DNA of 64,000 nucleotides from Lepidodermella squamata (lineage: Eukaryota; Animalia; Gastrotricha), in the NCBI GenBank assembly GCA_047495785.1, contig JBLDXI010000034.1, positions 372,001 through 436,000 of the forward strand, read 5' to 3'. The notes under the pieces are model-generated. The model had not been told where the DNA came from. It saw only the letters and a list, made by a program, of their open reading frames with translations, and ran no database searches. A program made the position numbers and the translations under genes. Of this stretch, positions 25,821-62,904 are shown piece by piece. Position 1 is the stretch's first letter. Every line of letters begins with the position of its first letter.

Positions 25821-27543
25821 TATATTCATGAGGTGTCATGAAACTAGGGCATTCTTAGTTAAGAGCCAAAAATTGCAGAAAAATTTAAGGTTATAACAAA
25901 TCAAAAATAATTTTTCCATAATTTTTCTGACATAATTAGCACCCTATGAATATTCATATTCTTAAAACTATTAAAACTTCTTTGTCTGTCCGAGTTACAC
26001 TCTTTGTTTTAGCTGAGTTTAACCCAAGCTCGAAGCTAAAAATAGTTCGGGCGCATGTGAGCTATTTTTAGTTTGAACTCAACAAATTCCTGGCCGTGCG
26101 TAACTTTTGATTTTCACTGAAGTTATCTCTGTTTTTTCGCCCACTCTTAACGGTGAATTATCTTTTGAAAAATGAATAGCGTGAAATTCATATGCTATCA
26201 TAAAAAGTGCTATAATTTATGCTCAGCTAGTGGAGCTAGTTACACTCATCTTTCACGGAGAGGGCAAAGGTCGTTGATATTTCCAATATGGGCAATTTCA
26301 TGTCATTTCATCGTGGATCATCGATCATCGGGGAGGATTTTTTTGGGATGGAGCTCGAAAAAATAAGGCATATTTACGCTTGCGACTTTTTTCATCCGAC
26401 GTAGTCGCTCGTGGTAATTTAATTTCCATTCGAACAACGTCAAACCCCAAGTAATCAGATCACAGACCACCGTGAACCTTCTTCTTCAGATCGGAGCTCA
26501 GAGAAGTTTGCTCGTGAGGGTTTTCTCCAGGGTGCGATCTTGGATCTCCGAGCTTGGAGATTTTTCACTAATACACCCTCCAGAAGCTTCCAAAATTAAC
26601 AAAACAGTGGAATAAATTATCATTTTGTCGTCTGGCCCGGCCCGGCCCGGACCATTAGTGCTGAGTTTCCAGTGATGAATCATCCAGTGATGATGATGCT
26701 GTTGCTGATATCAGAAACAGCAAATAGCCGGGCCATGAGTACTTCAAAAGTTCATCCTTTAAACAATAGATTCGAGTCGAATATCGCAACTTGCGCGCCA
26801 TAATAGTGTGCCGGAAATAGAAACAAACTATGATGACACATACGATCCAACTTTAATTACAGTATGCCAATTTTCATCAAGGAATGCCGCGCTGTAATAA
26901 CAAATATCCGATTTATTAATACTGCTTCTCTCATCTTGGCTCAAAATTTGCCAATGTGAATGCGTTGATATTATCTGAGGCTCAACTAATTATTGGCGTA
27001 ATCGCGTCACATGGGAACAATTGCGCGATCAATTCACCGCATGGAAAAAAATGGCAGTTCAAAAAATGAGCTTTTCCATCTCATTACCGTATTATTGTCA
27101 GAGCCGTAAGTAAGCTTCCGCCCGAATGGCTCATTATGCCACGACGCAGTAATTTATAGTCTTGCTTATGCTCGAGATTACACTTGCTATCGATCGGAAC
27201 GTGAAAATGACTAATTCAGAGTAGTTTAAGACATGAAGTTATTCGGTCGAATTTTCTGTTAACAGTTAAAAATCACGCAATTACAACATCACAAGCACGA
27301 TTATTGTCATTCGATTGGATTTTTCCAGATGATGGGTAGATTGACTTTTCCCACTTGAGTTTTTCGCTAGTCTTGCGCTTGACATCGGCAGAAATGCTGG
27401 CATAACAGTTCCCAGCCCTATGCAAGGCTGTTTTATTATGGCGAAGGTGACTAGGAACTTCGTGAGGAGAATATCGCCAACGCCGTGATGGCCGCGATAT
27501 GCGGCTGCCATAAATGCAGCGTCGCACCATCGTTCCGCACAGC

Positions 27544-29558
27544 TTACACTTTGGCGTTATATCGGCCACCTAGCGCCTCTACCACCTCGACATGGCCCTG
27601 CCGGGTGGCGATGTCCAGTGGTTTCCAGCCATAATTTGTGGCCTTATTCACGTCGGCGTTGAACTCACCAACCAACGTCCTCACGACCTCGACGTGGCCC
27701 TCATTTGCGGCGGCGTACAGTGGCGTCCAGCAACTATTATTATCCGTGGCCTTATTCACATCGGCGTTGAACCCACCAGCCAACGTCCTCACCACCTCGA
27801 CGTGGCCCTTGTAGGCGGCGGTCCACAGTGGCGTCCAGCCATTTCTATCGGCCCTATTCACGTCGGCGTTGAACTCACCAGCCAACAGCCTCACCAACTC
27901 GACGTGGCCATTGATGGCGGCGGTCCACAGTGGTGTACGGCCATCATTGGTGGCGGAATTAACATCGGCGTTGAACTCACCAGCCAACGTCTTCACCACC
28001 TCGACGTGGCCATTGAAGGCGGCGGTCCACAGTGGCGTCGCGTCTTTTGAATTATGAACTTCAATGACTGCATCAAATTGCCTGGCCAGAATTTCCACAA
28101 TGTCATTGTAGCCCTTTTGGGCCGCAAGGTACAACAGAGGGCAACCCTCTTCGTCCATGCAGTCAGGGCTAAGATTTAGGTCACTGTTCGACAGTAGCTG
28201 CGCCACTTTCAACAGGTCTTTCCGCCGACACACGCAGTCAAACAGCTCCTAGTTATTTCAAGAATGAATCAAGCGAGAAAGGTAAAATATTCCGAATATA
28301 CCCTAACAGCATCTTTGTTGGGTTCAGCGACTGATTGGTCCGGCTGAAGAATATGCATGGGTTGCAATGATTCAAATGTAAGATACGGAAAATTCATCAT
28401 ACCTTCGTATACCGCATAGGTGCTGATTTCAACAGAAAATTGTTTTCTTGAAGCTGAGTTGAGGTCGGTCGATCGTCAGGATTGACGGCAAGCATTGCCA
28501 TGACAAAATCCCGGAATTCATTGGAATAGCCGAGTGACTCGTCAAAAGGTTTCAAGTCATTACTAAAGTTATTATAGATTTCAGTCAGAGGCAACTCATA
28601 AGTGCGTCAAACTCATAGGTTTACCTCGAAATAGTCGCCATATTGAGGAACTGGAAAATTAATAAGTAACACTCAGTAGTCAATCACGCAAGATCATTCT
28701 CATACTGGTTCATAAAAGTTGGCTAATTTGAAGAGCGTGTATCCAAACGACCAAACATCACTTGCAGCTGATTTCGGTTCGCGCTTTAATTCATCAGGAT
28801 TTAATACCTCAGGAGGCGAAGTGTTCCACTTCGCTAGAGCAAACAGTTGTGAGCCACTGTTTGGAATATACAACACCTTATTAACGGTTAAATGCTCCTC
28901 TTCAATCTTACGTGTCTAATTTCTCGATGATTCCCAACTCAGCTAGTTTCGCTGTGCCTCGGTCTTCTGTTAACAGCAAATTGCTTGCCGTAATGTTGCG
29001 ATGAACGATACCTCGGCCGTGAAGAAAAGTTAAAGCTGATACGACTTGGCGCGACCATATTTGAAGCATAATTTCCGGGATGGGTCTAGTCTCAGGAGTG
29101 ATCAGGCTTTCGAAACTTCCTCCCTCACAAAACTCCATCACCAAATATCTCATCATGCAGTTGCGAGAAGAGGAATCTTCACCGAAATATGTCTCTATAG
29201 TTGGAATATTATTATTAAGAACTAAGGGGAGTGGAGCATTACCTTCGAAAGCGCCGAACACCTTGACAATGTTTGCATGGCTGATTGTGGCCATTAACAA
29301 ATCCTGCAATTTGAAAATATGACATGAATTATTGGGGTCACGGCGAAAACTCACTCTTTCGTGGAGAAGTTCAGCAATTTTGTCGTAGTGTTTTTCGAAA
29401 GTCTTGCGAAGGGCTGTCATGTTGGTTTCTTTGATAACCACTTGCTGTTGATCACGCCCATTACTTTTGCACAACATAGGTTGTCGTAGGCCGCCATGAC
29501 GCAAGACTTTACCAACCGTGAACTCCGACATAGATCGAGGATAATTTCTTGGTTCCAT
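27544..29558 (-). CDS. Pseudokinase-ankyrin gene, copy A (6 intact repeats; premature stop, decayed last two repeats to about 27350)
   Basis: Kinase motifs VVIKE, HANIVK, YLVMEFCEGG, HRNITASN, KLAELG, PPE, SDVWSFG and DRP are spread over short-intron exons, then the ankyrin exon 27544-28248. Exon structure matches copies B and C. Confidence 0.85.
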
Positions 29559-29814
29559 ATTCAATCCGAAGCTAAAAATAAAGGAAGGGAAGTAAAATTT
29601 GCCCTTGGGAATTAGGAAAGAGGAGAAAGCCTCATTACAAAAGGAACCTATTTCTTCAAAGCTACGGTGATAAGAAATCGGAGATACCGGTGGCTCGTCA
29701 TATCATATCTGCCAGAAACACGCTGAAACGCGCATTAATACTTGTACTCTAATCTCTGGACGAGGTTTGCCGGTAATATAGAGACCTCTTGGTATCTTTA
29801 TGTTTACGACCTTA

Positions 29815-31510: not shown

Positions 31511-32836
31511 TCAAGGAGCTTTGATAAGTTTGCCGTACTTCGCCAAGAACTGATCAAAGTTCATAAGTTTCGGGTTCAGCTTTTTCGTAGCTTCGAAATC
31601 GCGGCTAGCAGTCAATGGCTCGGAGAAATCCTGGTAAAACTGGAACATGTTAGCCATATCAGCGGCGCCAGGAAACGGAAAGGTCCGGAAAACTTCGATA
31701 GGCGTTGGCTGGTACACAACCTCCTCACCCAGAACCTTGCCAACCTTCTCAGCTTGCTCGCTCATCGTCATTGTTTCACTGGCAATCGCAATTCGCTTGC
31801 CAATCCAAGTTGGGTCTTTGAAAATTCCGTAAGCACAACGGCCAATATCGTCTACGGCCATTCCAGGCGTTTTGACGTGCCCCATCGGCGCCGTGATCAT
31901 CAATTTACTATCCTGGCCACGATGCATCGCGACCATGCCGGTACAGAAGTTGTCCCAAAATCCCGGGGTTACCATAAAGGTAACAGGCTGGCCGTCGAAG
32001 AATTTGTCGGAGCCAGCTTTAGTCTCGCAGAATGGTACTTTGTACTTGCCATGCAAAGTTGGTAATCGATCGTCGTTAAGAGGTCCAAATTTGTGAGGGT
32101 CATCCAAGGTAGACCAGATAACATGCTTGATCCCAGCTTTCCTAAAAAAAATAGGTCAGGATAGGATATTATAGGACAGATAGGATAAGTGGTCACACGT
32201 CGCTATTTTTTATATAATTTTTCAAATTTTTTGATTTATAAGAAGGAGAATAATGGATCGCTTGAATTTTTACTGAAATTTACTGAAACTTTACCGGGGC
32301 AAGTTTTACTTCTTGCGAATTTCGTATTCTATTGTATAAATTTTTTCAAATCATTTTAATTTTATTTCCATTTTAATTTGGGTTTTGGGGATTTTTATTT
32401 CAGTAGAATGGGAATTCTTCCTAAGGATTCCATTTCCTAGGGACATGGCAGAAAGTATGCTTCAACTTGCCTCGCTGCGTTAGCCATAGACTTGATTTGT
32501 GTAGTTTCTTTCTCGGGGTCAGCCCAATCGATGACCGACACGCAAAACAATCCATACGAGCCTTTGATAGCCTCGGCCAACGCGTCCTCATCGTTAGCAT
32601 CGACCTGAACGACTTCGACACCTTGCTCAGTCAAGGCCTTTGCTTTCGCCGAATTTACATCTCGGGTTAAGGCTCGAGCCTTGAATTCGGTAGTAGGATC
32701 TTCCAAAATCGCTCGAACAACAGCGCCACCCTTCAGAGAATAAATATAATTTATAAAGCAGCTCTAAAAGTTGATACTGTACCTGTTGTCCAGTTGCTCC
32801 TACAACAGAAATGATTTTCTTGTCAGATGCCATCAT
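31511..32836 (-). CDS. NmrA/HSCARG-like atypical SDR protein, copy A (3 exons)
   Basis: VVGATGQQG Rossmann motif, RALTRD, GIKHVIWSTLDD, DIGRCAYGIF, FPGAADMANMFQF. Confidence 0.92.
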
Positions 32837-39114: not shown

Positions 39115-41878
39115 TCATTCGACGGCCCGCTCGAGTACTTTAATAGTCTTGCCCTTGTCATCGGCGGAAACACTTTCATGACAGTTTGTGGCCCAATCTA
39201 TGGCTGTCTTTTTATCGCTATCACTGGCGTCGATGTTTGCTTTGAATTTCGTTAGCAGAACTTCAGCAACACCATGATGGCCGTGATAAGCGGCTACCAT
39301 CAACGGCGTCGAACCATCGTTGCTTGCAGCATTCACGTTGGCGTTATATTGGCCAGCTAGAGCCTCTACTACCTCGACGTGACCATTCTCGGCGGCTATG
39401 CACAGTGGCGTATAACCATCATTATCCGTGGATTCTACATTCGCCTTGAGTTCGCCAACCAACATCCTCGCCACCTCGGCGTGGCCATTCTCGGCGGCTA
39501 TGCATAGTGGCGTATAGCCATCACTCTCCGTCGATTCCACATTCGCCTTGAACTCGCCAGCCAATAACCTTACCACCTCGGCGTGGCCCTTCTCGGCGGC
39601 GATATACAGTGGGGTCCTGCCATTATTCGCGGTGGAATCAACGTCGGCGTTGAACTCGCCAGCCAACATCCTCACCACCTCAGCGTGGCCGTTGAATGCG
39701 GCAACGTGGAGTGGCGCAAACCCATCGTTTTTGCCAATATTAACAGCGGCGCTCGACTTGCTAGCCAACAGCCTCGCCATCTCTGTTTGGCCATTCTGGG
39801 CAGCGATGTAGAGTGGCGAAACGCCATCCTTTGTGGCCAAATTAACGTCAGCGTTCATGTCGCCTGCCAACATCCTTACTACCTCAGCGTGGCCATTGAA
39901 GGCGGCGGCAAACAGTGGCGTACGGCCATCATTTGCGGCGGAATCCACATCGGCCTTGAACTCGCTAGCCAACATCTTCACAACTTCGACGTGGCCATTC
40001 TTGGCGGCGACAAACAATGGCGAAAAGCCATCCTTTGAAGCAGAATTAACATCGGCCTTGAACTCGCTAGCCAACATCCTAACCATCTCGGTGTGACCAT
40101 TGAAGGCGGCGACGTACAGTGGCGTAAAGCCATCTTTATCGGCCGAATTAACATGGGCCTTGAACTCGCTAGCCAACAGTCTCACCATCCCAACATCGCG
40201 ATTGAAGGCGGCGATCAACAGGGGCGTTATGCCACCTTCATTACATACTTCAGTGTCTGCATCAAACTGCCTAACCAGAGTTTCCACAATGTCTCTGTAG
40301 CCTTTTTGAGCAGCAAGTAACAACAGAGGAATTCCGTCTTCGTCTTTGCAGTCTGGGCTAAGGCCGAGGTCACTTTTAGATAATAGCCGAACTAATGTCA
40401 ACACATTTTTCCGCCACAATACGCAGTCAAAAAGGACCTAATAACTATAATTAAAACGCCTGGATCAAGTTTGAAATAACGCAAAGCTACCTGAACGGCC
40501 TTTTGGTTTTGTACAGCGACTGATTGGGCCGGCTGAGGAATAGGGGGAACATGATTGCAATGAATTCGCTGTCATTCAAATTAAATCGAACCTTTGTATA
40601 CCGCATCGGTGCTGATTTCAGCAGAAAAGTATTGTCTTGAAGCTGCCTTGAGGTTGGTCGATGCTTAGGCTGTTCGGCAAGCATTGCCATGACAAAATCT
40701 CGCAATTCATCGGAGTAGCCGCGTGATTCGTCAAATGGTTTCAGTTTATAACTGCGAAAATGATAGATTCCTAATTGAGACCACTGTGTCGTACTCATAT
40801 TTACCTCAAAATATCCTGCATGGAGGTGAACTGGAAAATGATTCAAGCTTATGGATTCATCACTAAAGGTCATTCTCATACTAGTTCATCGAAGTTGGCC
40901 AATTCGAAGAGCGCATATCCCAACGACCAAACGTCACTTGCAGGTGATTTCGGTTCGCATTTCAATACCTCAGGAGGGGAAGTGTACCACACTGTTACGG
41001 CAGTCATTTGCGAATCACTGTTTAGAATAATAAAATGTATCTAGGAATGCTTAATTTCAAACTCACAGGTCAAATCTATCGGTGATTCCCAAGTCAGCTA
41101 GTTTCGCTGTGCCGTGGTCTTCTGTTAGTAGTATATTGCTTGTCTTGATGTTGCGATGAACAATACTTCGGCCGTGAAGATAAGCCAAAGCTGATACGAG
41201 TTGGCGCGACCATATTTGAATCATAATTTCCGGGATGGTCTCGATCCCGCTCGGTCGCGATCCCTCGGTCGCGATCAGGTATTCGAAGCTGAAACCCTTG
41301 CAGAACTCCATCACCAAATACCTCATGCGAGATTCTTTTGCGTATTCCTCTTTTGTTGAAAAATGTTAGCTATGTTTGCATCAAAAAGATGAATCTCAAA
41401 CCTTCGAAAGCGCTGAAAAACTTGGCTATATTTGCATGGCTCATATTGACCATTAACGAATCCTATTAATCCAAAACATGTGAATTGAGGGAGTTTAACG
41501 GCCTTTTCCACGATACTTTTCCTTCAAGCATTGTCACCCTAAATTTTGAGTTTTGATTTAGATTTCAAAGGAGAAATGCAAACAACACTCTTAAGACAGT
41601 TTTCGTTTAACTATTATTTTATATTGAAAACCCATAGCTTAAGTATATAGTGTATGAATGAATGAATGCGTATTTACCCTTTCGCGGAGAATTTCCAGAG
41701 TTCTGTCGAAGTCTCCTCTTGATAGCTGGCGAAGGTTTTTCAAGTTGGTTTCCTTGATAATAAATTGTTCTTCAGGGCGCCTTGTGTGCTTGCACAATAT
41801 CAATTTTCGGTAGTCGCCATGATTCAGGGTCATAACATCAGTGAACTCCGACTTGGATCGATACATTCTTGAATCCAT
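39115..41878 (-). CDS. Pseudokinase-ankyrin gene, copy B (12 ankyrin repeats)
   Basis: FIIKE, YLVMEFCKG, HRNIKTSN, KLADLG, PPE, SDVWSLG; ankyrin exon from about 40437 to 39115 is open to the stop. Confidence 0.88.
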
Positions 41879-42705: not shown

Positions 42706-43941
42706 TTAAGGAGCTTTGATAAGCTTGCCGTATTTCACCAGAAACTGATCAAAGCTCATGAGTTTCGGGTTCAGCTTCTTCGTAGATTCGTAATCGATGC
42801 TAGCATTGAATTTCTCGGTGAAATCTTGGTAAAACTGGAAAATGCTCGCCAATTCACCCGCGCCAGGAAACGGAAAGGTCCGGAAAACTTCGATAGGTGT
42901 AGGCTGGTACAAAATCTCCTCGCCTAGAACCTTACCAACCTTCTCAGCTTGCTCGCTGACCGTCATCGTTTCACTAGCAATCGAAATTCGCTTGCCAATC
43001 CAAGTTGGGTCTTTAAAAGCTCCGTAAGCACAACGGCCGATATCGTCTACGGCCATTCCGGGCGTTTTGACATTCCCCAACGGCGTTGTGATCGCCAATT
43101 TACCATCTTGGCCGCGATGCATTGGTTCCAAGCCGGTGCAGAAGTTGTCCCAAAATCTTGGTGCTATCAGAAACGTGACAGGCTGACCATCGAAAAATTT
43201 GTCAGAGCCAGCTTTAGTCTCGCAGAATGGTATTTTGTATTTGCCATGCAATGTTGGAAATCGATCGTCGCTGAGTGGTCCAAATTTGAGAGGGTCGTCC
43301 AGGGTAGACCAGACAACATGCTTGATCTCAGCTTTCCTAAAAAAACAGGGTTATCACAAATCACTATTTTTTATGCATTCATTTTTTCAAAAGGAGAAAA
43401 TAAAGCGTTTGAATTTTAATAATTAATTCGAGTTTAAGTAATTGAGGAATTTCTGAAAAATCTTCAAAAATCGTATCATTTTGTTTCGATTTCAATTTGG
43501 CGATCTTTGATTTTCAGATCGAAAGTACTTTTGTTTGAATGCTTTCTTAGGAAAAGAAGGAATTATTTTTCAACTTGCCTTGCCGCGTTAGCCATGGACC
43601 TGATCTGGGCTATTTCTTTCTCAGGATCAGTAAAATCAACAACCGAGACGCAAAACAAGCCGTACGAGCCTTTGATAGCCGCAGCCAACGCGTCCTCATC
43701 ATTAGCATCGACCTGAGCGAGTTCGACGCCTTGCTCAGCCATAGCCTTGGCTTTCGCCGAGTTGACATCTCGGGTTAAAGCTCGAGCCTTGAAATCGGTG
43801 ACAGGATCCTCCAAAATCGCCCGAATAACAGAAGCGCCCTTCAAAAATTCAACAAATTACAACTATAATCTCAAAATGTTGATGATTTACCTGTTGGCCA
43901 GTTGCTCCTACAACAGAGATTATTTTCTTTCCAGATGCCAT
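42706..43941 (-). CDS. NmrA/HSCARG-like protein, copy B (3 exons)
   Basis: Paralog of copy A with the same intron positions and an open frame. Confidence 0.92.
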
Positions 43942-49223: not shown

Positions 49224-50715
49224 TTGTTAGGCTATTGTCATGATGAGCTCACCGACCATACCAGCTTAGTCTCAAAAATCCTCGAAAACCGAATAGCTAA
49301 TTACCTCGAAAAAGGTTCAATCACCGCAAATCAAGCTGCTGTTCTATCAACGTACGCCAGTCGTGATTTACCGGCAATTATCGACTACGTCACAACTCGC
49401 CACAACAAATTCAGCTATACCGACCCGAACAAGGCTGGAAATCCGTTCCTAAAATCATCACTCGATTTCACGGACAAATTCTTCGAATCTTTGGAGCAGT
49501 TACTGCCTCAACTTGTCGAGGCGGGTTTTTTCGAGGGAAATGAAGAATTAATTACGGCATCGGAATTTATCCTACTCTACATTCGCGAGACAGTTTTGAT
49601 TTTGGAGCAAAGCAATCAGGCGAAAATTAGCGAAAAATTACAGCAAATTTTTGAAAAATGGTCGCTATTCAAGCAAGCTTTAGTCGGGACATTGCTAGAT
49701 AATTTCGCTATGGATAAAAATTCCGAAAAAAATCGAGAAAAAATATCGGATTTATTAACAAAAATCAGCGAAATTTTACTCGAAAATACGCGAAAAATTG
49801 AAAATGGCCAGGAAAATTTTGAAAAATTCATCGAAAATACAGTCGACTTGTGCCGAGATGAAATATTGAAAATCGTCATCAAAAATGGACAAAGGGTGAA
49901 ATTAGAAGTTTATTCTGAATTTTTCAAATTTTTTGCGAAATTATCCGAAATTTTGTATCACCGTGAAAAGTTTCACGTCGACTTGAAGAAGGCTAAAATT
50001 TTAATTGATGATTTTAATTCTAAAATTGCTAAATTCCCCGAAAAATTGACTTGGATGTCTAGTGAAGATCGCGAAGATTTTGCGGAAATTTTCAGATTTT
50101 TCAAGAAATTTTCCGAAAATTCACACGATTTTCTATCGAGTTACCGCGACTACGGCGAGAGCGATGTTCTCGGTTCGAGAATTGCAATTTACGAACAGCT
50201 CAAGACGCCTGGCAAGAAGGTTGTCTCGATTTTATTGAAGTGGAAATTGCGCGATAAAGCCAACGATTTGCGAACGAAATCGCCGCAGGAGAACGAGCAG
50301 ATTATGCGATATTGTCTGTATCTAGGTCAAGAATTTTACGGCCTAGTTTTCGCCGGGTTGACGTCGCAAATTGACAGCAAATCACGGCCGGAGTTGGCTG
50401 AATGGCTGCTGGAGGCTAAATCGGCGACGGCTAAATTTTTGGCACTTCAACGCGAATCTGGTGGCGGTTTGACGGCGAGTGATCAGGAAGTAGCGGCTTT
50501 TCAGGCCGAATTGGATGCGATTGTTGACTCTGTTTTAAATGTTGTGAATCATTTCGACATTGCTCAGCTTGCTTTCAAGCGTTTTATTGCATTTATTGTC
50601 GCCTAAAATTGTCAATAAAAAAATTAATAATAATATTTTAGGTGACCGCCGAGATTCCATTGAGGTTTTATGGGAATTTCAGCAGTTTCATCCTAATTTC
50701 AGTCGTAAATTATGG
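49224..50715 (+). CDS. Alpha-helical protein of unknown function; ends uncertain, 3' part hit by a MITE
   Basis: 460-aa open frame. A probable intron at 50581-50641 extends it to DRRDSIEVLWEFQQFHPNFSRKLW. Paralog at 61975-62904. Confidence 0.65.
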
Positions 50716-51411: not shown

Positions 51412-52523
51412 ATGGCACTTGAAAAGAAAATCATTTCTGTTGTAGGAGCAACTGGACAACAGGTAAAGCATCGAAATTCTAAGATTTTTCCTGAAGTTTG
51501 TTCAATTTCTGAAGGGTCGATCTGTTGTTCGAGCGATCTTGGAGGATCCTGCAACTGAATTCAAGGCTCGAGCTTTAACCCGTGATGCCAACTCTGCGAA
51601 AGCCAAGGCCCTGGCTGAGCAAGGTGTCGAAGTCGTTCAGGTCGATGCTAACGATGAGGATGCGTTGGCCGAGGCTATCAAAGGCTCGTATGGATTGTTT
51701 TGCGTCTCGGTAATCGACTGGACCGATCCAGATAAAGAAATCGCACAGATCAAGTCGATGGCTAGCGCGGCAAAGCAAGTTGAAAAATAATTTCCTACCT
51801 TGTCCTAGGAATAATAATCCAGGCTCAAACGCTTTAATATTGTCATTCTATAAAAATCCTACAAAGAAATTAAAGATTTGTCTGTATTTTAGGAAAGCTG
51901 GAATCAAACATGTTATTTGGTCTACCTTGGATGACCCTCACAAATTTGGACCCCTTGGCGACGATCATTTTCCAACTTTGCACGGCAAGTACAAAGTAAC
52001 GCACTGCGAGACGAAAGCTAACTCAGACAAGTTCTTCGATGGCCAGCCTGTTACCTATCTGATAACCCCAGCATTTTGGGACAACTTCTATACTGGCTTT
52101 TTCCCAATGCATCGCGGCCAGAATGGTAAACTGATGATTACAGTCCCAATGGGGCATGTTAAAACGCCTGGGATGGCCGTAAACGATATTGGCCGTTGTG
52201 CTTACGGAATTTTCAAAGACCCATTATGGATTGGCAAGCGAATTGCAATTGCTAGTGAATCGATGACGGTCAGCGAGCAAGCGGAGAAAATAGGCAAGGT
52301 TCTAGGTGAAGAGATTGCGTACCAGCCTGCGCCAATGGAAGTTTTCCGAAACCTGCCGTTTCCTGGCGCGGGTGAATTGGCGAACATGTTCCAGCTTTGC
52401 CAGGATTTCTCCGAGCAATTGAATGCTAGCCGCGATTTCGAAGCTACGAAGAAGCTGAACTCGAAACTAATGAACTTTGATCAGTTTCTGGCGAAATACG
52501 GCAAACTTATCAAAGCTCCTTGA
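51412..52523 (+). CDS. NmrA/HSCARG-like protein, copy C
   Basis: Exons 51412-51462, 51515-51774 and 51893-52523 (second intron GC-AG); GATGQQG motif; open frame. Confidence 0.92.
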
Positions 52524-52989: not shown

Positions 52990-55900
52990 ATGGAACTAAA
53001 GACGCATCCAACGATGTCGCAGTTCACTGTAGTTGAAACCTTGCGTCATGGCCGCCTACGAAAATCTCTATTGTGCAAACGTAACGGGAGCCCTCAAGAA
53101 CGAGTAGTTATCAAAGAAACCAACTTAACGAATCTTGAGAAAAACTTCAACGGAATTGGTGAACTTCTCCGTGAAAGAGTGAGTTTCAAATGCTCAGAGT
53201 TTTCAAAATTCGATTCATAATAATGAGTTGAAATAAAGTTAAGTTAAATTGAAATTGAGTTAATTTCTAATGTGAGGATCTTTTCGTCTATATATATGCC
53301 TTGATGGTGTTTTCCCAAGGCTACTCAATCAAAACTCGAAGTAGTTGAAATGAGGTTACTTCGAAGACAAGTAAACCTCAACAATTCATTTCATATTTCA
53401 AATTGCAGGATTTGTTGATGGTCGATATCAACCATGCAAACATTGTCAAGGTGTTAGACGCTTTCGAAGGTAACGTTCTACTTCCCTTAGTTCTTAATAA
53501 TAATATTCCAATAATAGAGACATATTCCGGTGAAGATTCTTCTTCTCTCAACTGCAAGATGAGGTATTTGGTGATGGAGTTTTGCGAGGGAGGAAGTTTC
53601 GAAAGCTTGATCGCGACTGAGACTGCACCCATCCCAGAAATTATGCTTCAAATATGGTCGCGCCAACTTGTATCAGCTTTGGCTTACCTTAACGACCGAA
53701 AAATCGTTCGTCGCAACATAACGACAAGCAATGCACTGCTAACAGAAGACCGAGGCCCAGCTAAACTGGCTGATTTGGGAATGGTCGAGAGATTAGACAC
53801 GTATGACTGAAAAGAAGCATTTAATCCTAGATAAATTCGATATTCAAAACAGTGGTTCGCAAATAACCGCTCTAGCTGCATGGTACCCTTCCGCTCCTGA
53901 GATTTTGCAATGTCAACCGAAATCATCTGCAAGTGATGTTTGGTCGTTGGGATTCGCGCTCTTCAAATTAGCCAACTTCCAAGAACCAGTATGACAATGA
54001 ACATGAATGTACGCGATGATTTACTTTTGTTTTATCCTCCCCCAGTTCATCTCAACGGCGGATATTTTAAGGTAAACTCATGAGTTGGATACAGAGGTCT
54101 CAAGCTTAAATCTATGATACTTTAGTAATAAACAGAAACCATTCGACGAGTCACGTGGCTATTCCGTTGAATTCCGGGATTTTGTCATGTCAATGCTTGC
54201 CGTGAATCCTGATGATCGACCGGCCTCAACTCAGCTTAAAGCCAGTAGTTTTCTGTTGAAATCAGCACCCATGCGGTATACAAAGGTATGATTGGTTTCC
54301 ATTTCATCTGAATTGTTGCTGCAGACTTGATTCATCTTTCCTTCTATACTTCAGCCAGAACATACGTTAGCTGAACCCAACCAAGTGGCTGTTAAGGTAG
54401 CTGCGGATTATTCGACAATTGATTCAGGCTTTAGTAATTTAAATTGCCAGGAGTTATTTGACTGCGTAATGAAGCGAAAAGATGTGTTGAAATTGGTGCA
54501 GCTACTCTCTAACAGTGATCTCGGTCTTAGCCCGGACTGCAAAGACGATGATGGATTGCCTCTGTTGTACCATGCAGCTGGGAAAGGCTACAACGACATT
54601 GTGGAAACTCTGGTCAGGCAATTTGAGGCAAACATTGAAGTTCGTAATGCTAAAGGTTCAACACCACTGCTGATTGCCGCCTTCAATGGCCACATCGAGG
54701 TTGTGAAGATGTTGGCTGGCGAGTTCAAGGCGAACGTGGAATCGGCGCTCGAAGTTGGGGCCACGCCACTGTTTGTCGCCGCCCAGAATGGCCATGCAGA
54801 GGTTGTGAAGTGTCTGGCTGGCGAGTTCAAGGCGAACGTGGAATCGGCGCTCGAAGATGGCACGACACCACTGTATGTCGCCGCCCAGAATGGCCACGTC
54901 GAGGTTGTGAAGATGTTGGCTGGCAAGTTCAAGGCGAACGTGGAATCGGCGCTCGAAGATGGGGCCACGCCACTGTATGTCGCCGCCCGGAATGGCCACG
55001 TCGAGGTTGTGAAGATGTTGGCTGGCGAGTTCAAGGCGAACGTGGAATCGGCGCTCGAAGATGGGGCCACGCCACTGTTTGTCGCCGCCGAGAATGGCCA
55101 CGTCGAGGTTGTGAATATGTTGGCTGGCGAGATCAAGGCGAACGTGGAATCGGCGCTCGAAGATGGGGCCACGCCACTGTTTGTCGCCGCCGAGAATGGC
55201 CACGTCGAGGTTGTGAATATGTTGGCTGGCGAGTTCAAGGCGAACGTGGAATCAGCGAATAAATATGGGGCCACGCCACTGTATGTCGCCGCCCGGAATG
55301 GCCACATCGAGGTTGTGAGGATGTTGGCTGGCGAGTTCAAGGCACACGTGGAATCGGCGCTCGAAGATGGCACCAGACCATTGTGTACCGCTGCTCTGAA
55401 TGGCCACGCCAAGGTGGTGACAATGTTGGCTGGCGAGTTCAATGCCGACGTGAATTCTGCAGATAAAGATGGCTTTACGCCACTGTATGTCGCCGCCCAG
55501 AATAGCCACATCGAGGTTGCGAGGATGTTGGCTGGCGAGTTCAAGGCGAACGTGGAATCGCCGAAAAATAATGGGGCCACGCCACTGTTTGTCGCCGCCC
55601 AGAATGGGCACAAAGATGTTGTGAAAATGTTGGCTGGCGAGTTCAAGGCGAACGTGGAATCGGCGCTTAAAGATGGCACGACACCATTGTGGATCGCCGC
55701 CCAGAATGGCCACATCGGGGTTGTGAAGATGTTGGCTGGCGAGTTCAAGGCGAACGTGGAATCGGCGCTCGAAGATGGGGTAACGCCGCTGTTTGTCGCT
55801 GCCTTCAATGGCCACATCGAGGTTGCGAGGATGTTGTCTGGCGGGTTCAAGGCGAACGTAGAATCAGCGAATAAAAATGGGGCCACGCCACTGTATGTCG

Positions 55901-58122
55901 CCGCCCGGAATGGCCACATCGAGGTTGCGAGGATGTTGGCTGGCGAGTTCAAGGCGAACGTGGAATCAGCGAATAAAAATGGGGCCACGCCACTGTATGT
56001 CGCCGCCGAGAATGGCCACATCGAGGTTGCGAGGATGTTGGCTGGCGAGTTCAAGGCGAACGTGGAATCGCCGAAAAATAATGGGGCCACGCCACTGTTT
56101 GTCGCCGCCCAGAATGGGCACGCCGAGGTTGTGAAGATGTTGGCTAGCGAGTTCAAGGCACACGTGGAATCGGCGCTTAAAGATGGCACGACACCATTGT
56201 GGATCACCGCCCAGAATGGCCACGCCAAGGTGGTGAGGATGTTGGCTGGCGAGTTCAAGGCACACGTGGAATCGGCGCTCGAAGATGGCACCAGACCATT
56301 GTGTACCGCTGCTCTGAATGGCCACGCCAAGGTGGTGACAATGTTGGCTGGCGAGTTCAATGCCGACGTGAATTCTGCAGATAAAGATGGCTTTACGCCA
56401 CTGTATGTCGCCGCCCAGAATGGCCACATCGAGGTTGCGAGGATGTTGGCTGGCGAGTTCAAGGCGAACGTGGAATCGCCGAAAAATAATGGGGCCACGC
56501 CACTGTTTGTCGCCGCCCAGAATGGGCACAAAGATGTTGTGAAAATGTTGGCTGGCGAGTTCAAGGCGAACGTGGAATCGGCGCTTAAAGATGGCACGAC
56601 ACCATTGTGGATCGCCGCCCAGAATGGCCACATCGGGGTTGTGAAGATGTTGGCTGGCGAGTTCAAGGCGAACGTGGAATCGGCGCTCGAAGATGGGGTA
56701 ACGCCGCTGTTTGTCGCTGCCTTCAATGGCCACATCGAGGTTGCGAGGATGTTGTCTGGCGGGTTCAAGGCGAACGTAGAATCAGCGAATAAAAATGGGG
56801 CCACGCCACTGTATGTCGCCGCCCGGAATGGCCACATCGAGGTTGCGAGGATGTTGGCTGGCGAGTTCAAGGCGAACGTGGAATCAGCGAATAAAAATGG
56901 GGCCACGCCACTGTATGTCGCCGCCGAGAATGGCCACATCGAGGTTGCGAGGATGTTGGCTGGCGAGTTCAAGGCGAACGTGGAATCGCCGAAAAATAAT
57001 GGGGCCACGCCACTGTTTGTCGCCGCCCAGAATGGGCACGCCGAGGTTGTGAAGATGTTGGCTAGCGAGTTCAAGGCACACGTGGAATCGGCGCTTAAAG
57101 ATGGCACGACACCATTGTGGATCACCGCCCAGAATGGCCACGCCAAGGTGGTGAGGATGTTGGCTGGCGAGTTCAATGCCGGCGTGAATTCTGCAGATAA
57201 AGATGGCTTTACGCCACTGTTTGTCGCCGCCGAGAATGGCCACATCGAGGTGGTGAAGATTCTGGCTGGCGAGTTCAAGGCCGACGTGGAATCGCCGAAA
57301 AATAATGGGGCCACGCCACTGTATGTTGCCGCCCAGAATGGCCACATCGAGGTTGCGAGGATGTTGGCTGGCGAGTTCAAGGCGAACGTAGAATCAGCGA
57401 ATAAAAATGGGGCCACGCCACTGTATGTTGCCGCCCAAAATGGCCACATCGAGGTTGCGAGGATGTTGGCTGGCGGGTTCAAGGCGAACGTGGAATCGGC
57501 GCTCGAAGATGGGGTAACGCCGCTGTTTGTCGCTGCCTTCAATGGCCACATCGAGGTTGCGAGGATGTTGGCTGGCGGGTTCAAGGCGAACGTAGAATCA
57601 GCGAATAAAAATGGGGCCACGCCACTGTATGTTGCCGCCCAAAATGGCCACATCGAGGTTGCGAGGATGTTGGCTGGCGAGTTCAAGGCGAACGTGGAAT
57701 CAGCGAATAAAAATGGGGCCACGCCACTGTTTGTCGCCGCCGAGAATGGCCACATCGAGGTTGCGAGGATGTTGGCTGGCGAGTTCAAGGCGAACGTGGA
57801 ATCAGCGAATAAAAATGGGGCCACGCCACTGTATGTCGCCGCCGAGAAGGGCAACCTCGAGGTGATTGAGGCACTAGCTGGCCAATTCAGCGCCAAAGTA
57901 AATGCTGCTCGTAATGATGGTAGGACCCCGTTGATGGTCGCTGCATATAATGGCCATCACTATGTTGCTGAAGTTCTCCTTACGAAATTCCAAGCAAACA
58001 TCGACGCCGTAGATCGCCGTAATAAGACAGCCTTTCATTGGGCCACGAACTGCGATGATAGTGTTTCTGCTGATGACAAGCGCAAGACTATCGAAATACT
58101 TGAGCGGCCAAAATTAAAATAG
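52990..58122 (+). CDS. Pseudokinase-ankyrin gene, copy C (about 35 ankyrin repeats)
   Basis: Exons approx. 52990-53178, 53409-53469, 53518-53800, 53853-53988, 54046-54071, 54126-54285, 54355-54396 and 54451-58122 are phase-compatible. Motifs RRNITTSN, KLADLG, APE, SDVWSLG; 34-aa repeats follow. Confidence 0.92.
54660..57900 (+). repeat. 102-bp coding tandem repeat (ankyrin units) with a 918-bp higher-order duplication
   Basis: Repeats 9-17 recur as repeats 18-26. Identical off-frame ORFs at 55689/56607 and 55877/56795 are each 918 bp apart. Confidence 0.97.
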
Positions 58123-60708: not shown

Positions 60709-61621
60709 AAAGTGATCTGTCGAAAGACCACTTTTTCGAAAATTTAGTAAAAATTTATTTTCAATCGGTTTAAAATGTATTTGGTGCCATTAGATAGAGC
60801 GCAAAATTCTCTACAAGCGTACTGCAACAGTTAAATATCGACTCTATCCAGCTTGGAGCGCGCAGGAAAAAACCTTGTTACACAGCTATTAAAAATACGC
60901 AAAGTACTTGTGTGTGCGCATGCAAGAGAATAGTCATACTTGTAAAATTTTTCCTCATTTACAACAAACGCAAATACCGTCAACAAATATGCCAGTGGAA
61001 CGAGCGCAGAAAACTGCAAATGCCAATTTTGATATCACAATCAAGTCATTAGCCGTTAGAAAGTCATCAAGGTAAACGCATGTTAGTCGCTTGATAAATG
61101 CCTAAAGTGGTCTGTCAAAAGACCACTTTTTCGAAAATTTAGTAAAAATTTATTTTCAATCGGTTTAAAATGTATTTGGTGCCATTAGATAGAGCGCAAA
61201 ATTCTCTACAAGCGTACTGCAACAGTTAAATATCGACTCTATCCAGCTTGGAGCGCGCAGGAAAAAACCTTGTTACACAGCTATTAAAAATACGCAAAGT
61301 ACTTGTGTGTGCGCATGCAAGAGAATAGTCATACTTGTAAAATTTTTCCTCATTTACAACAAACGCAAATACCGTCAACAAATATGCCAGTGGAACGAGC
61401 GCAGAAAACTGCAAATGCCAATTTTGATATCACAATCAAGTCATTAGCCGTTAGAAAGTCATCAAGGTAAACGCATGTTAGTCGCTTGATAAATGCCTAA
61501 AGTGGTCTGTCAAAAGACCACTTTTTCGAAAATTTAGTAAAAATTTATTTTCAATCGGTTTAAAATGTATTTGGTGCCATTAGATAGAGCGCAAAATTCT
61601 CTACAAGCGTACTGCAACAGT
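60709..61621 (+). repeat. 395-bp tandem repeat, about 2.3 copies
   Basis: Units start at about 60711, 61106 and 61501. Identical ORFs at 60831 and 61226. Confidence 0.95.
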
Positions 61622-61980
61622 CTGACCGTCATCGCTTCACTAGCAATCGCAATTCGCAATTATCCCGGAGAAAATCTGTTCAACCGGGTAAAATACCGAA
61701 AATTACGGAACCAGTTACCATCGGGATTTCCGGGTTTTCCTCGGTAAATTATTTAGAAAATGTTTAATTTAAAATGAAATAAATTTATTTAAAAAATTTG
61801 CCAGTTTAAAAAAATTGGATGGGCAACTTCTGGGACTCGCTGCCATAATTTACGACTGAAATTAGGATCGAAGTGCTGAAATGTCGATAAAACCTCAATG
61901 TAATCTTGATTTTCGGTCACCTAAAATGCTTTTGTTAATTTTTATGTTAATTTAACAATTTTAAGCGACAATAAATGCAA
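61622..61980 (-). repeat. Inverted duplicate of 62885-63243
   Basis: Reverse complement matches by eye across about 359 bp. Confidence 0.93.
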
Positions 61981-62904
61981 GTTGGGACATTGCTCGATAA
62001 TTTCTCCATTGATAAAAGTTCCGAAAAAAATCGAGATAAAATATCTGATTTACTAACAAAAACCAGCGAAATTTTACTCGAAAATACGCGAAAAATTGAA
62101 AAAGGCCAGGAATATTTTGAAAAATTCATCGAAAATACAGTCGACTTGTGCCGTGATGAAATGTTGAAAATCGTCATCAAAAATGACCAAAGGGTGAAAG
62201 TAGAATTTTATTGTGAATTTTTCAAATTTTTTGCAAAATTATCCGAAATTTTGTATCACCGTGAAAATTTTCACGTCGACTTGAAGAAGGCTAAAGCTTT
62301 AATTGATGATTTTAATTCTAAAATTGCTAAATTCCCCGAAAAACTGACTTGGATGTCTGGTGAAGATCGCGAAGATTTTGCGGAAATTTTCAGATTTTTC
62401 AAGAAATTTTCCGAAAATTCCCTCGATTTTCTATCGAGTTATCGCGACTACGGCGAGAGCGATGTTCTCGGTTCGAGAATTGCAATTTACGAACAGCTCA
62501 AGACCCCAGGCAAGAAGGTTGTCTCGATTTTATTGAAGTGGAAATTGCGTGATAAAGCCAACGATTTGCGAACGAAATCGCCGCAGGAGAACGAGCAGAT
62601 TCTGCGCTATTGTCTGTATCTAGGTCAAGAATTTTACGGCCTCGTTTTCGCTGGGTTGACGTCGCAAATTGACAGCAAATCACGGCCAGAGTTGGTTGAA
62701 TGGCTGCTGGAGGCTAAAACGGCGACGGCTAAATTTTTGGCACTTCAACGCGAATCAGGCGGCGGTTTGACGGCGAGTGATCAGGAAATAGCGGCATTTC
62801 AGGCCGAATTGGATGCGATTGTTGACTCGGTTTTAAATGTTGTGAATCATTTCGACATTGCTCAGCTCGCTTTCAAGCGTTTTATTGCATTTATTGTCGC
62901 TTAA
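61975..62904 (+). CDS. 5'-truncated paralog of 49224-50606, with its ATG supplied by the inverted duplicate
   Basis: 309-aa open frame highly similar to residues from VGTLLDNF onward. Confidence 0.6.
   Translation: MQVGTLLDNFSIDKSSEKNRDKISDLLTKTSEILLENTRKIEKGQEYFEKFIENTVDLCRDEMLKIVIKNDQRVKVEFYCEFFKFFAKLSEILYHRENFHVDLKKAKALIDDFNSKIAKFPEKLTWMSGEDREDFAEIFRFFKKFSENSLDFLSSYRDYGESDVLGSRIAIYEQLKTPGKKVVSILLKWKLRDKANDLRTKSPQENEQILRYCLYLGQEFYGLVFAGLTSQIDSKSRPELVEWLLEAKTATAKFLALQRESGGGLTASDQEIAAFQAELDAIVDSVLNVVNHFDIAQLAFKRFIAFIVA

What the first reader, a model, noticed from the sequence alone, without database searches (positions are those of the whole stretch)
54451..58122. Single-exon ankyrin arrays vary from 6 to 35 repeats, with DARPin-like variable positions
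Seen: the paralogs share N-cap and C-cap repeats but carry 6(+2 decayed), 12 and about 35 units. In copy C the 102-bp framework is nearly invariant while the hairpin (ALED/ANKN/PKNN/ADKD/ALKD), the residue before TPL (A/T/F/V), the residue after it (F/Y/W/C) and the residue after AA (Q/R/E/F/L) switch combinatorially, as if half-repeats were shuffled. Known: these are largely the positions forming the concave binding face that is randomised in DARPins, and high-identity repeat shuffling diversifies fungal NLR sensor domains. Inference: a recombination-diversified binding repertoire.
Basis: partly seen in the sequence, partly recalled or inferred. Interest (0 to 1): 0.82.

Follow-up and report, generated by a model that had tools for sequence, protein, structure and literature searches.

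The report
Recombining ankyrin array on a dead kinase
Three neighbouring copies of a dead-kinase gene end in single-exon ankyrin arrays of 6, 11 and 34 repeats, and the longest array has a constrained framework but fast-changing, recombined residues on its likely binding face, as in fungal immune receptors; variation between individuals was not tested.

Summary
Copy C (exon 54451-58122, +) has 34 in-register units of exactly 102 bp (34 aa) plus a degenerate tail. Copy B has 11 plus a tail. Copy A has 6 plus a decayed C-cap (one stop, two frameshifts).

Nine of C's units are a near-verbatim 918-bp block duplication with one mismatch in 944 bp, so 24 of the 31 internal units are distinct.

Framework codons are constrained: dN/dS is about 0.2 and amino-acid identity is 92%. 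Seven hairpin and helix-1 codons are only 38% identical.

The units are mosaics. Site incompatibility rises from 7% to 59% with distance (p<0.001).

My M1a/M2a test gives LRT 22-24, with omega about 3-4 at positions p34, p1, p2, p8, p12 and p16. In 62 null simulations with heavy recombination the maximum LRT was 15.5. Simpler counting gives only 1.2-1.8.

Four of the six DARPin library positions vary.

Gene C is intact: 8 exons, 1522 aa, with an N-terminal kinase-like domain lacking the catalytic Asp.

This matches the evolutionary mode described for fungal NLR repeats, on a different partner domain and apparently in an animal. Differences between individuals or tissues could not be tested, and no ligand is known.

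The parts
52990..58122 (+). Gene C, full model. Eight exons: 52990-53178, 53409-53469, 53518-53800, 53853-53988, 54046-54071, 54126-54285, 54355-54396 and 54451-58122. It encodes an intact 1522-aa protein with an N-terminal kinase-like domain followed by the ankyrin array.
   Evidence: All seven introns are GT..AG and 48-230 nt long, and the joined CDS has no internal stop. Five of the junctions appear as GT..AG joints in contigs of the RNA-like run X2, including the acceptor that makes the exon start at 54451.
53409..54396 (+). Kinase-like exons of gene C. The motifs read RRN in place of HRD and DLG in place of DFG, so this is a probable pseudokinase.
   Evidence: Pfam Pkinase, E 4e-14. The closest solved kinases are STE20/SLK, MAP4K and NEK1, at E about 1e-12. 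P0127, a Logan fragment, is 34% identical along the whole ORF and keeps HRD and DFG.
54451..58122 (+). Single exon encoding the whole ankyrin domain of copy C (1223 codons).
   Evidence: ORF. Pfam Ank E 4e-219 and Ank_2 E 1.5e-268. The AF2 model (pLDDT 75) matches AnkB/AnkR solenoids at TM about 0.6.
54547..58014 (+). 34 in-register units of 102 bp. Unit 0 is the N-cap, units 1-31 are internal, and units 32-33 are C-cap units. A degenerate tail follows at 58015-58119.
   Evidence: Register listing. TRF finds period 102, 31.2 copies, 84% matches and 0% indels. Identity matrix.
55315..57176 (+). Tandem block duplication with a 918-bp (9-unit) period and 2.03 copies. Region 55315-56258 equals 56233-57176 except for one mismatch at 55504.
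   Evidence: Shift comparison gives exact runs of 754 and 189 bp at an offset of 9 units.
57097..57198 (+). Hybrid unit 25. Its first 80 nt or so are identical to unit 16. Its end (NAGVNSAD) resembles the end of units 8/17. It looks like an unequal-crossover junction.
   Evidence: Unit 25 is 89% identical to unit 16 and 88% to units 8/17.
39115..40419 (-). Copy B ankyrin exon: 11 units plus tail, intact. Mean amino-acid identity among its internal units is 57%.
   Evidence: An AG acceptor lies at the same position as in C, just upstream near 40440.
27273..28233 (-). Copy A ankyrin exon: 6 units, then a decayed C-cap with a stop at 27544-27546 and two frameshifts further on.
   Evidence: Three-frame translation.
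28908..29564 (-). Kinase-like exon of copy A, with HRN in place of HRD and ELG in place of DFG.
   Evidence: ORF and alignments.

Best explanation
These are germline paralogues of one lineage-specific gene. It encodes a cytoplasmic protein with an N-terminal catalytically dead kinase domain and a C-terminal ankyrin solenoid that lies in a single exon.

Shown:
- After the genes duplicated, the interior of each array evolved on its own.
- In copy C the interior grew to 31 units through nested tandem duplications of 2-, 3- and 9-unit blocks. Recombination or short-tract conversion between the 102-bp units left them as mosaics.
- Selection keeps the helix and packing framework. The hairpin tip (p34, p1, p2) and the two ends of the inner helix (p8, p12) change faster than synonymous sites.

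Inferred:
- The concave groove binds protein ligands.
- Unit shuffling plus point changes at these positions alters what is bound.
- The dead kinase domain serves as an adaptor or signalling module.
- This makes the family a rapidly evolving recognition or scaffold family, in the manner of fungal NLR repeat domains.

Nothing here supports somatic diversification.
For: Intact gene. Gene C is an intact 1522-aa ORF with canonical splice sites. Contigs of an RNA-like run show spliced forms joining the kinase exons to the ankyrin exon.

Independent expansion. The caps are orthologous between B and C, while 21 of 24 distinct internal C units form a C-only clade with SH-aLRT 96. Between B and C caps, dS is 0.42-0.63 and dN/dS is 0.27-0.42.

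Block duplications and a hybrid unit are visible.

Recombination. The PHI-type test gives p<0.0005. Incompatible site pairs rise from 7% at 1-6 nt to 59% at 49-101 nt, and permuting codon order gives p<0.001.

Selection.
- Framework dN/dS is 0.17-0.2. The seven face codons give 1.5-1.8 against the array-wide dS.
- M1a versus M2a gives LRT 22.1 on the ML tree and 24.1 on the NJ tree. omega2 is 2.9-3.8, and posterior probability exceeds 0.95 at p1, p2, p8, p12, p16 and p34.
- Sixty-two null data sets were simulated under M1a with three independently shuffled segments. None reached LRT 22; the maximum was 15.5.
- Among unit pairs at least 94% identical in DNA, differing face codons are 33 nonsynonymous to 1 synonymous. 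Other codons are 13 to 17.

The same positions are the variable ones in copy B (Spearman 0.72).
Against: - The face set was chosen after seeing the data. The a-priori DARPin set gives dN/dS of only 1.19 (P=0.22), and no single codon survives multiple-test correction in the counting test.
- The site-model test is my own implementation, run on 34 codons and 24 sequences. It uses fixed relative branch lengths and NEB posteriors, and it does not model multi-nucleotide changes. Several face codons differ by 2-3 bases. Old repeat types carried in by conversion could explain that as well as repeated selection.
- p16 varies mainly among I, V and A and lies on the outer helix.
- Copy A is decaying, as expected for neutral birth-and-death turnover.
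- Expression of this exact copy is not shown. The RNA-run contigs over its unique 3' end differ at 2-5 bases per 100-150 nt.
- No ligand, no polymorphism data and no close homologues exist to compare with.
Confidence: 0.6

Rival explanations
1. Neutral turnover. The gene family undergoes rapid birth and death. Unequal crossing-over expands and contracts the array for no adaptive reason. The variable positions are simply the least constrained surface positions of any ankyrin repeat (omega near 1), reshuffled by recombination.
For: Counting methods give omega of only 1.2 for the a-priori DARPin positions. Within the face codons themselves it is 0.85-0.97. Copy A is a decaying pseudogene. The latest step is an unselected-looking verbatim copy of 9 units. 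Recombination inflated false positives of the site test to 16% at the nominal 5% level in my simulations. The same positions vary in the older, more diverged copy B.
Against: The observed LRT of 22-24 exceeded all 62 null simulations, whose maximum was 15.5. Face dN is 1.5-1.8 times the array-wide dS, with a bootstrap interval of 1.42-2.28. Among near-identical units, differing face codons are 33 nonsynonymous to 1 synonymous. The framework is strongly constrained, so the gene was functional while the units diverged.
Confidence: 0.3
2. Assembly artefact. The extreme length of copy C, at least the 918-bp block duplication, comes from a false tandem duplication in the assembly. On this reading the true array has about 25 units.
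For: Two copies of 944 bp differ at a single base. That base could be a heterozygous site. The available runs are k-mer contigs that break up inside the array and cannot confirm its length.
Against: The window has no N and no gap. The block is only 0.9 kb, well within the reach of long reads. Older nested duplications of 2 and 3 units at 91-99% identity show that the array really grows this way. The rest of the finding does not depend on this block.
Confidence: 0.07
3. Mechanical or structural role. The long array acts as a spring or spacer, as in NOMPC/TRPN. Repeat number would matter, but binding-face diversity would not.
For: Thirty-four repeats make more than one superhelical turn. NOMPC is among the best sequence and fold matches and has similar 34-residue 'LADKFKA'-type units. 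PMC5100051 describes the TRPN spring.
Against: There is no channel or membrane domain. Paralogues carry 6, 11 and 34 repeats, whereas TRPN repeat number is strongly conserved (PMC5100051). Variation is concentrated on the binding face.
Confidence: 0.03

Closest known systems
Fungal NLR (NACHT/NB-ARC) proteins with highly internally conserved ANK, TPR or WD repeats (Podospora HNWD family and ANK NLRs; Dyrka et al. 2014, PMC4986451; Paoletti 2007; Chevanne 2010)
   Same: Both have high-identity solenoid repeats of 33-34 aa and recombination between repeats. Both show hypervariable, positively selected positions on the concave face (beta-hairpin/loop and inner helix). Repeat number differs between family members (one search compared).
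   Different: There is no NOD domain here; the N-terminal partner is a dead kinase. The host appears to be an animal (scan notes). Mean identity between units is 74% aa and 83% DNA, below their 85% cut-off, which only sub-blocks reach. Allelic repeat-number polymorphism, shown by PCR in Podospora, is untested here.
Giardia Nek kinase-ankyrin family, 'Protein 21.1' (Manning et al. 2011, PMC3218828)
   Same: An N-terminal kinase domain, mostly catalytically dead, is followed by a variable ankyrin array (1-26 repeats, median 8). The family is large, fast-evolving and lineage-specific.
   Different: The lineage is unrelated. Giardia repeats carry a TALM motif, whereas these have TPL(Y/F/W). Giardia repeats are described as divergent rather than high-identity. 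The kinase here cannot be assigned to Nek: its best solved matches are STE20/SLK, MAP4K and NEK1 at similar weak E-values.
Vertebrate ANKK1 / RIPK4 (RIP-type kinase plus about 10 ankyrin repeats)
   Same: The domain order is kinase followed by an ankyrin array. ANKK1 proteins appear among the ANK-level hits at 34% identity.
   Different: The kinase domains are barely similar (BLASTP E=0.006 over 74 aa). The catalytic Asp is absent here. Repeat number is not stable between paralogues.
DARPin libraries (consensus ankyrin scaffold randomised at positions 2, 3, 5, 13, 14 and 33; the position list is from my own knowledge of Binz et al. 2003 and was checked against a solved DARPin)
   Same: Both have a near-constant framework with variation at hairpin and inner-helix positions. 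p1, p2, p4 and p12 correspond to library positions 2, 3, 5 and 13.
   Different: p13 (library position 14) is invariant Asn, and p33 (position 33) is only A/P. The hot positions p34 (D1), p8 (the His of TPLH) and p16 (L17) are framework in DARPins. The unit is 34 aa rather than 33, with one extra residue after helix 2.
Concerted evolution of metazoan domain repeats (Schueler and Bornberg-Bauer 2016, PMC5100051)
   Same: High unit similarity combined with a PHI-detectable recombination signal. That paper describes the pattern as rare and enriched in host-pathogen functions.
   Different: That survey gives no case of a pseudokinase-ankyrin gene. Here site-specific selection was also tested.

Membership tests
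Ankyrin repeat (Pfam PF00023 / PF12796) | Repeated motif of about 33 aa with TPL..AA..GH, significant match to the family profiles | tested here: met
   Ank E 4.3e-219 (30 stretches) and Ank_2 E 1.5e-268. Aligns to Ankyrin-1, NOMPC and DARPins with one extra residue per unit.
Ankyrin repeat (Pfam PF00023 / PF12796) | Stacked helix-turn-helix solenoid fold | tested here: met
   The AF2 single-sequence model has pLDDT 75 and pTM 0.70. Foldseek matches AnkB, AnkR and NOMPC with probability 1.0 and TM 0.56-0.61. The loops are poorly modelled.
Fungal NLRs with highly internally conserved repeats | NACHT or NB-ARC NOD domain N-terminal of the repeats | tested here: not met
   The 299 aa upstream of the array are taken up by a kinase-like domain. 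Pfam finds Pkinase only.
Fungal NLRs with highly internally conserved repeats | At least 85% identity between repeats over at least 100 aa (criterion of PMC4986451) | tested here: inconclusive
   Mean identity between units is 74% aa, and only 15% of pairs reach 85%. Runs such as units 13-14, 27-31 and the duplicated block do exceed it.
Fungal NLRs with highly internally conserved repeats | Recombination or reshuffling between repeats | tested here: met
   PHI-type test p<0.0005 and distance-dependent incompatibility p<0.001. Hybrid unit 25 and block duplications.
Fungal NLRs with highly internally conserved repeats | Positive selection at concave-face positions | tested here: met
   M1a/M2a LRT is 22-24 with sites p34, p1, p2, p8 and p12 (plus p16), above all 62 recombination-null simulations. 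Caveat: counting methods give omega of only 1.2-1.8.
Fungal NLRs with highly internally conserved repeats | Repeat-number polymorphism between individuals | not testable with these tools
   Only Logan k-mer contigs were available, and they fragment inside the array.
DARPin-like variable surface | Variation confined to positions equivalent to 2, 3, 5, 13, 14 and 33 | tested here: inconclusive
   Four of the six vary (p1, p2, p4, p12). p13 is invariant and p33 nearly so. The extra hot positions are p34, p8, p16 and p20.
ANKK1 / RIPK4 | RIP-type active kinase domain homologous to ANKK1/RIPK4 | tested here: not met
   BLASTP against an ANKK1 protein gives E=0.006 and 24% identity over 74 aa. The motif is HRN/RRN instead of HRD. 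The best solved matches are STE20, MAP4K and NEK1.
Giardia Nek-ankyrin (Protein 21.1) | Nek-family kinase domain and TALM-type ankyrin repeats | tested here: not met
   The repeats have TPL(Y/F/W/C), not TALM. The kinase cannot be assigned to Nek. Only the domain order and the variable repeat number are shared.
TRPN/NOMPC ankyrin spring | About 29 conserved repeats attached to a TRP channel | tested here: not met
   The 1522-aa model has no channel domain. Repeat number differs 6/11/34 between paralogues.

The most novel reading that the evidence does not exclude
This animal may carry a germline-encoded, rapidly diversifying intracellular recognition family. In it, a pseudokinase signalling module would be coupled to an ankyrin sensor whose specificity is renewed by unit shuffling and positive selection. 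That would be an independent invention of the strategy of the fungal high-internal-conservation NLRs. It predicts that repeat number and order are polymorphic between individuals.
Probability: 0.2. Interest if true: 0.8.

Novelty: new variant of a known kind. Interest (0 to 1): 0.5.

Why it matters
High-identity solenoid repeats with hypervariable binding positions are how fungi diversify NLR sensors. PMC4986451 reports them as rare in animals (0.8% of repeats), and PMC5100051 describes concerted repeat evolution in metazoa as exceptional. A clear animal case on a pseudokinase partner would add a new architecture to the rapidly evolving recognition proteins. It would also be a natural experiment in how ankyrin binding surfaces diversify, and a directly testable locus: count the units in long reads, then look for ligands. 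If the array is the same in all individuals and the selection signal does not hold, this is just a recently expanded repeat gene.

Tried and rejected
- Organism. It could not be identified. The ANK exon of copy B gives only generic ankyrin hits at 26-50% identity. The kinase ORF has no hit better than 39% among 1.84 billion representatives. The N-cap search found nothing close. The NmrA-like neighbour hits bacteria. The atlas search was uninformative. The contig of P0127 has no context.
- Polymorphism. The single read-laying run returned only Logan contigs. The two joints inside the array skip 1557 and 803 bases, have sides of 23-26 bases and are not multiples of 102. I treat them as k-mer graph or paralogue artefacts.
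- Somatic diversification. No evidence of any kind, so not pursued.
- DARPin position list. A paper stating the positions was not found in the library. The mapping was read from a solved DARPin alignment instead.
- Structure mapping. The AF2 tool returns no coordinates, so the mapping rests on sequence correspondence. The single-sequence model is moderate and models the hairpins as helices.
- Simulation. A first batch timed out.
- Membership. ANKK1/RIPK4 and Giardia Nek were tested and rejected.


Full report
WHAT IS THERE

The window holds three paralogous genes. Each lies next to an NmrA-like gene inside a segmentally duplicated unit: copies A and B on the minus strand and copy C on the plus strand. 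In all three the whole ankyrin domain sits in one exon that starts at the same AG acceptor.

- Copy C (54451-58122) is a 1223-codon open exon. From 54547 it consists of 34 consecutive units of exactly 102 bp (34 aa) with no indel, followed by a degenerate tail.
- Copy B (39115-40419) has 11 units plus the tail.
- Copy A (27273-28233) has 6 units. Its C-cap then carries a stop at 27544-27546 and two frameshifts.

The N-caps are 69-76% identical between copies.

THE GENE

Five GT..AG joints seen in contigs of an RNA-like run, plus two further consensus sites, give an 8-exon model for gene C (52990-58122). Its introns are 48-230 nt and it encodes an intact 1522-aa product.

The first 285 or so residues are a protein-kinase fold (Pfam Pkinase). 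It has RRN/HRN in place of HRD and DLG/ELG in place of DFG. This agrees with an earlier scan note on the same window.

The nearest solved kinases are STE20/SLK, MAP4K and NEK1 at about 1e-12. ANKK1's kinase domain is barely similar. One Logan fragment, P0127, is 34% identical along the whole ORF and keeps HRD and DFG.

No close homologue of either domain exists in the protein collections. Scan notes describe an animal genome with very many ankyrin genes. I could not name the organism.

ARRAY ANATOMY

The DNA identity matrix shows that units 8-16 and 17-25 are a tandem block duplication. Region 55315-56258 equals 56233-57176, a 918-bp period with one mismatch in 944 bp.

Older nested blocks are also visible. 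Units 12-14 resemble 29-31 at 96-99%, and units 10-11 resemble 15-16 at 91-92%. Unit 25 is a hybrid of a unit-16-type head and a unit-8/17-type tail.

Of the 31 internal units, 24 are distinct.

On a tree of units the caps pair between genes (C0/B0, C33/B10, C32/B9). In contrast, 21 of 24 distinct internal C units form a C-only clade with SH-aLRT 96. DNA identity between B and C caps is 75-82%, against 80-100% among C's internal units. The interior of C therefore expanded or was homogenised after the genes separated.

WHERE THE VARIATION IS

In the register EDGATPLYVAARNGHVEVVKMLAGEFKANVESAL, entropy exceeds 1.5 bits at p1, p2, p4, p8, p12, p16, p20 and p34.

Amino-acid identity is 38% at seven face codons (p33, p34, p1, p2, p4, p8, p12) and 92% at 22 framework codons. 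Third positions of those framework codons are only 82% identical. The framework is therefore held by purifying selection, not merely by youth.

An alignment to a solved DARPin maps its variable positions 33, 2, 3, 5, 13 and 14 to p33, p1, p2, p4, p12 and p13. The extra 34th residue falls after helix 2.

Four of the six library positions vary here. p13 is invariant Asn and p33 is A/P. p34 (DARPin D1), p8 (the His of TPLH) and p16 (L17) are additional hot positions. Copy B varies at the same positions (Spearman 0.72).

RECOMBINATION

The hairpin residues occur as a few linked blocks (ALED, ANKN, PKNN, ADKD, ALKD). These blocks combine with different p8/p12 pairs and different helix-2 variants.

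A PHI-type permutation test gives p<0.0005. Excluding same-codon pairs, the share of incompatible site pairs rises from 7% at 1-6 nt to 59% at 49-101 nt, and permuting codon order gives p<0.001.

SELECTION

- Nei-Gojobori estimates give framework dN/dS of 0.165. Face dN is 0.50 against an array-wide dS of 0.28, a ratio of 1.78 (bootstrap 1.42-2.28). The a-priori DARPin set gives about 1.2.
- Parsimony counting on a tree gives 1.5 for the face set (P=0.005, but the set was chosen post hoc), 1.19 for the DARPin set (not significant) and 0.2 for the framework.
- My own GY94 M1a/M2a implementation gives LRT 22.1 on the ML tree and 24.1 on the NJ tree. omega2 is 2.9-3.8 on 15-24% of codons. NEB posterior exceeds 0.95 at p1, p2, p8, p12, p16 and p34.
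- Recombination inflates this test, so I simulated 62 data sets under M1a with three independently shuffled segments. Of these, 16% passed the nominal 5% threshold, but the maximum LRT was 15.5.
- Among unit pairs at least 94% identical, differing face codons are 33 nonsynonymous to 1 synonymous. Other codons are 13 to 17.

Caveats: the alignment is tiny, the code is home-made, multi-nucleotide codon differences are not modelled, and the face set was chosen post hoc. I read the result as probable, not proven, diversifying selection.

WHAT COULD NOT BE TESTED

Allelic or somatic variation could not be tested. The only runs are k-mer contigs that shatter inside the array. Their two internal joints are not multiples of 102 and have short sides. 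The high summed depth inside the array suggests that more paralogues exist elsewhere. Contigs over C's unique 3' end differ at a few bases, so expression of this exact copy is not shown.

COMPARISON WITH WHAT IS KNOWN

The evolutionary mode matches fungal NLR repeat domains: high internal conservation, recombination, repeat-number differences, and positive selection on the hairpin and inner helix (PMC4986451). Here, however, there is no NOD domain, average unit identity is below their 85% cut-off, and allelic variation is unknown.

The domain order (a dead kinase followed by a variable ankyrin array) parallels the Giardia Nek/Protein 21.1 family (PMC3218828) and, loosely, ANKK1/RIPK4. Membership of both was tested and not met. 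Concerted evolution of metazoan repeats is reported as rare (PMC5100051).

VERDICT

Recombination and a selected variable face are shown. A 'repertoire' is not. I classify this as a new variant of a known kind and rate it of moderate interest.

Noticed in passing
window 51780-52523 (+); 42706-43251 and 43563-43844 (-); 31511-32107 (-): Each duplicated unit carries an intron-split NmrA/HSCARG-like gene. Among its top 120 protein hits, every one that carries a name is bacterial (about 50% identity; Terrimicrobiaceae, Niastella, Bryobacteraceae), most of the rest are unnamed metagenomic proteins, and none is named as eukaryotic. It is a candidate old bacterial-to-animal transfer that was co-duplicated with the pseudokinase-ankyrin gene.
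   Followed up: partly
window 49224-50606 (+) and 61975-62904 (+): A 460-aa helical ORF with no Pfam hit and no convincing atlas relative (best score 0.78) recurs 12.7 kb downstream. It appears to be the first gene of the duplicated unit, so a fourth unit may start near 61.9 kb and run past the end of the window.
   Followed up: partly
window 60709-61621: A tandem repeat of 395 bp, 2.3 copies at 99% identity, lies between copy C and the next duplicated unit.
   Followed up: no
window 53179-53408 (gene C) versus 29.3 kb region of copy A: The first intron of the kinase-like gene is 230 nt in C. In A the same GTGAGT donor is followed by only 51 nt, which happen to stay in frame, so A's ORF reads through it. 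A contig of run X1 shows a further copy with 30 nt in place of 209 nt at this position.
   Followed up: partly
L001:602-1171 (P0127, Logan SRR21279729): This is the only relative found that aligns along the whole kinase-like ORF (34% identity, E 2e-33). It keeps HRD and DFG, so active cousins of this pseudokinase exist in some unsampled organism.
   Followed up: partly
window 4691-6076 (-) and 4172-4654 (-): Two ORFs that look like the reverse-transcriptase part of a retroelement, judged by eye from the translation and not scanned against any family library.
   Followed up: no
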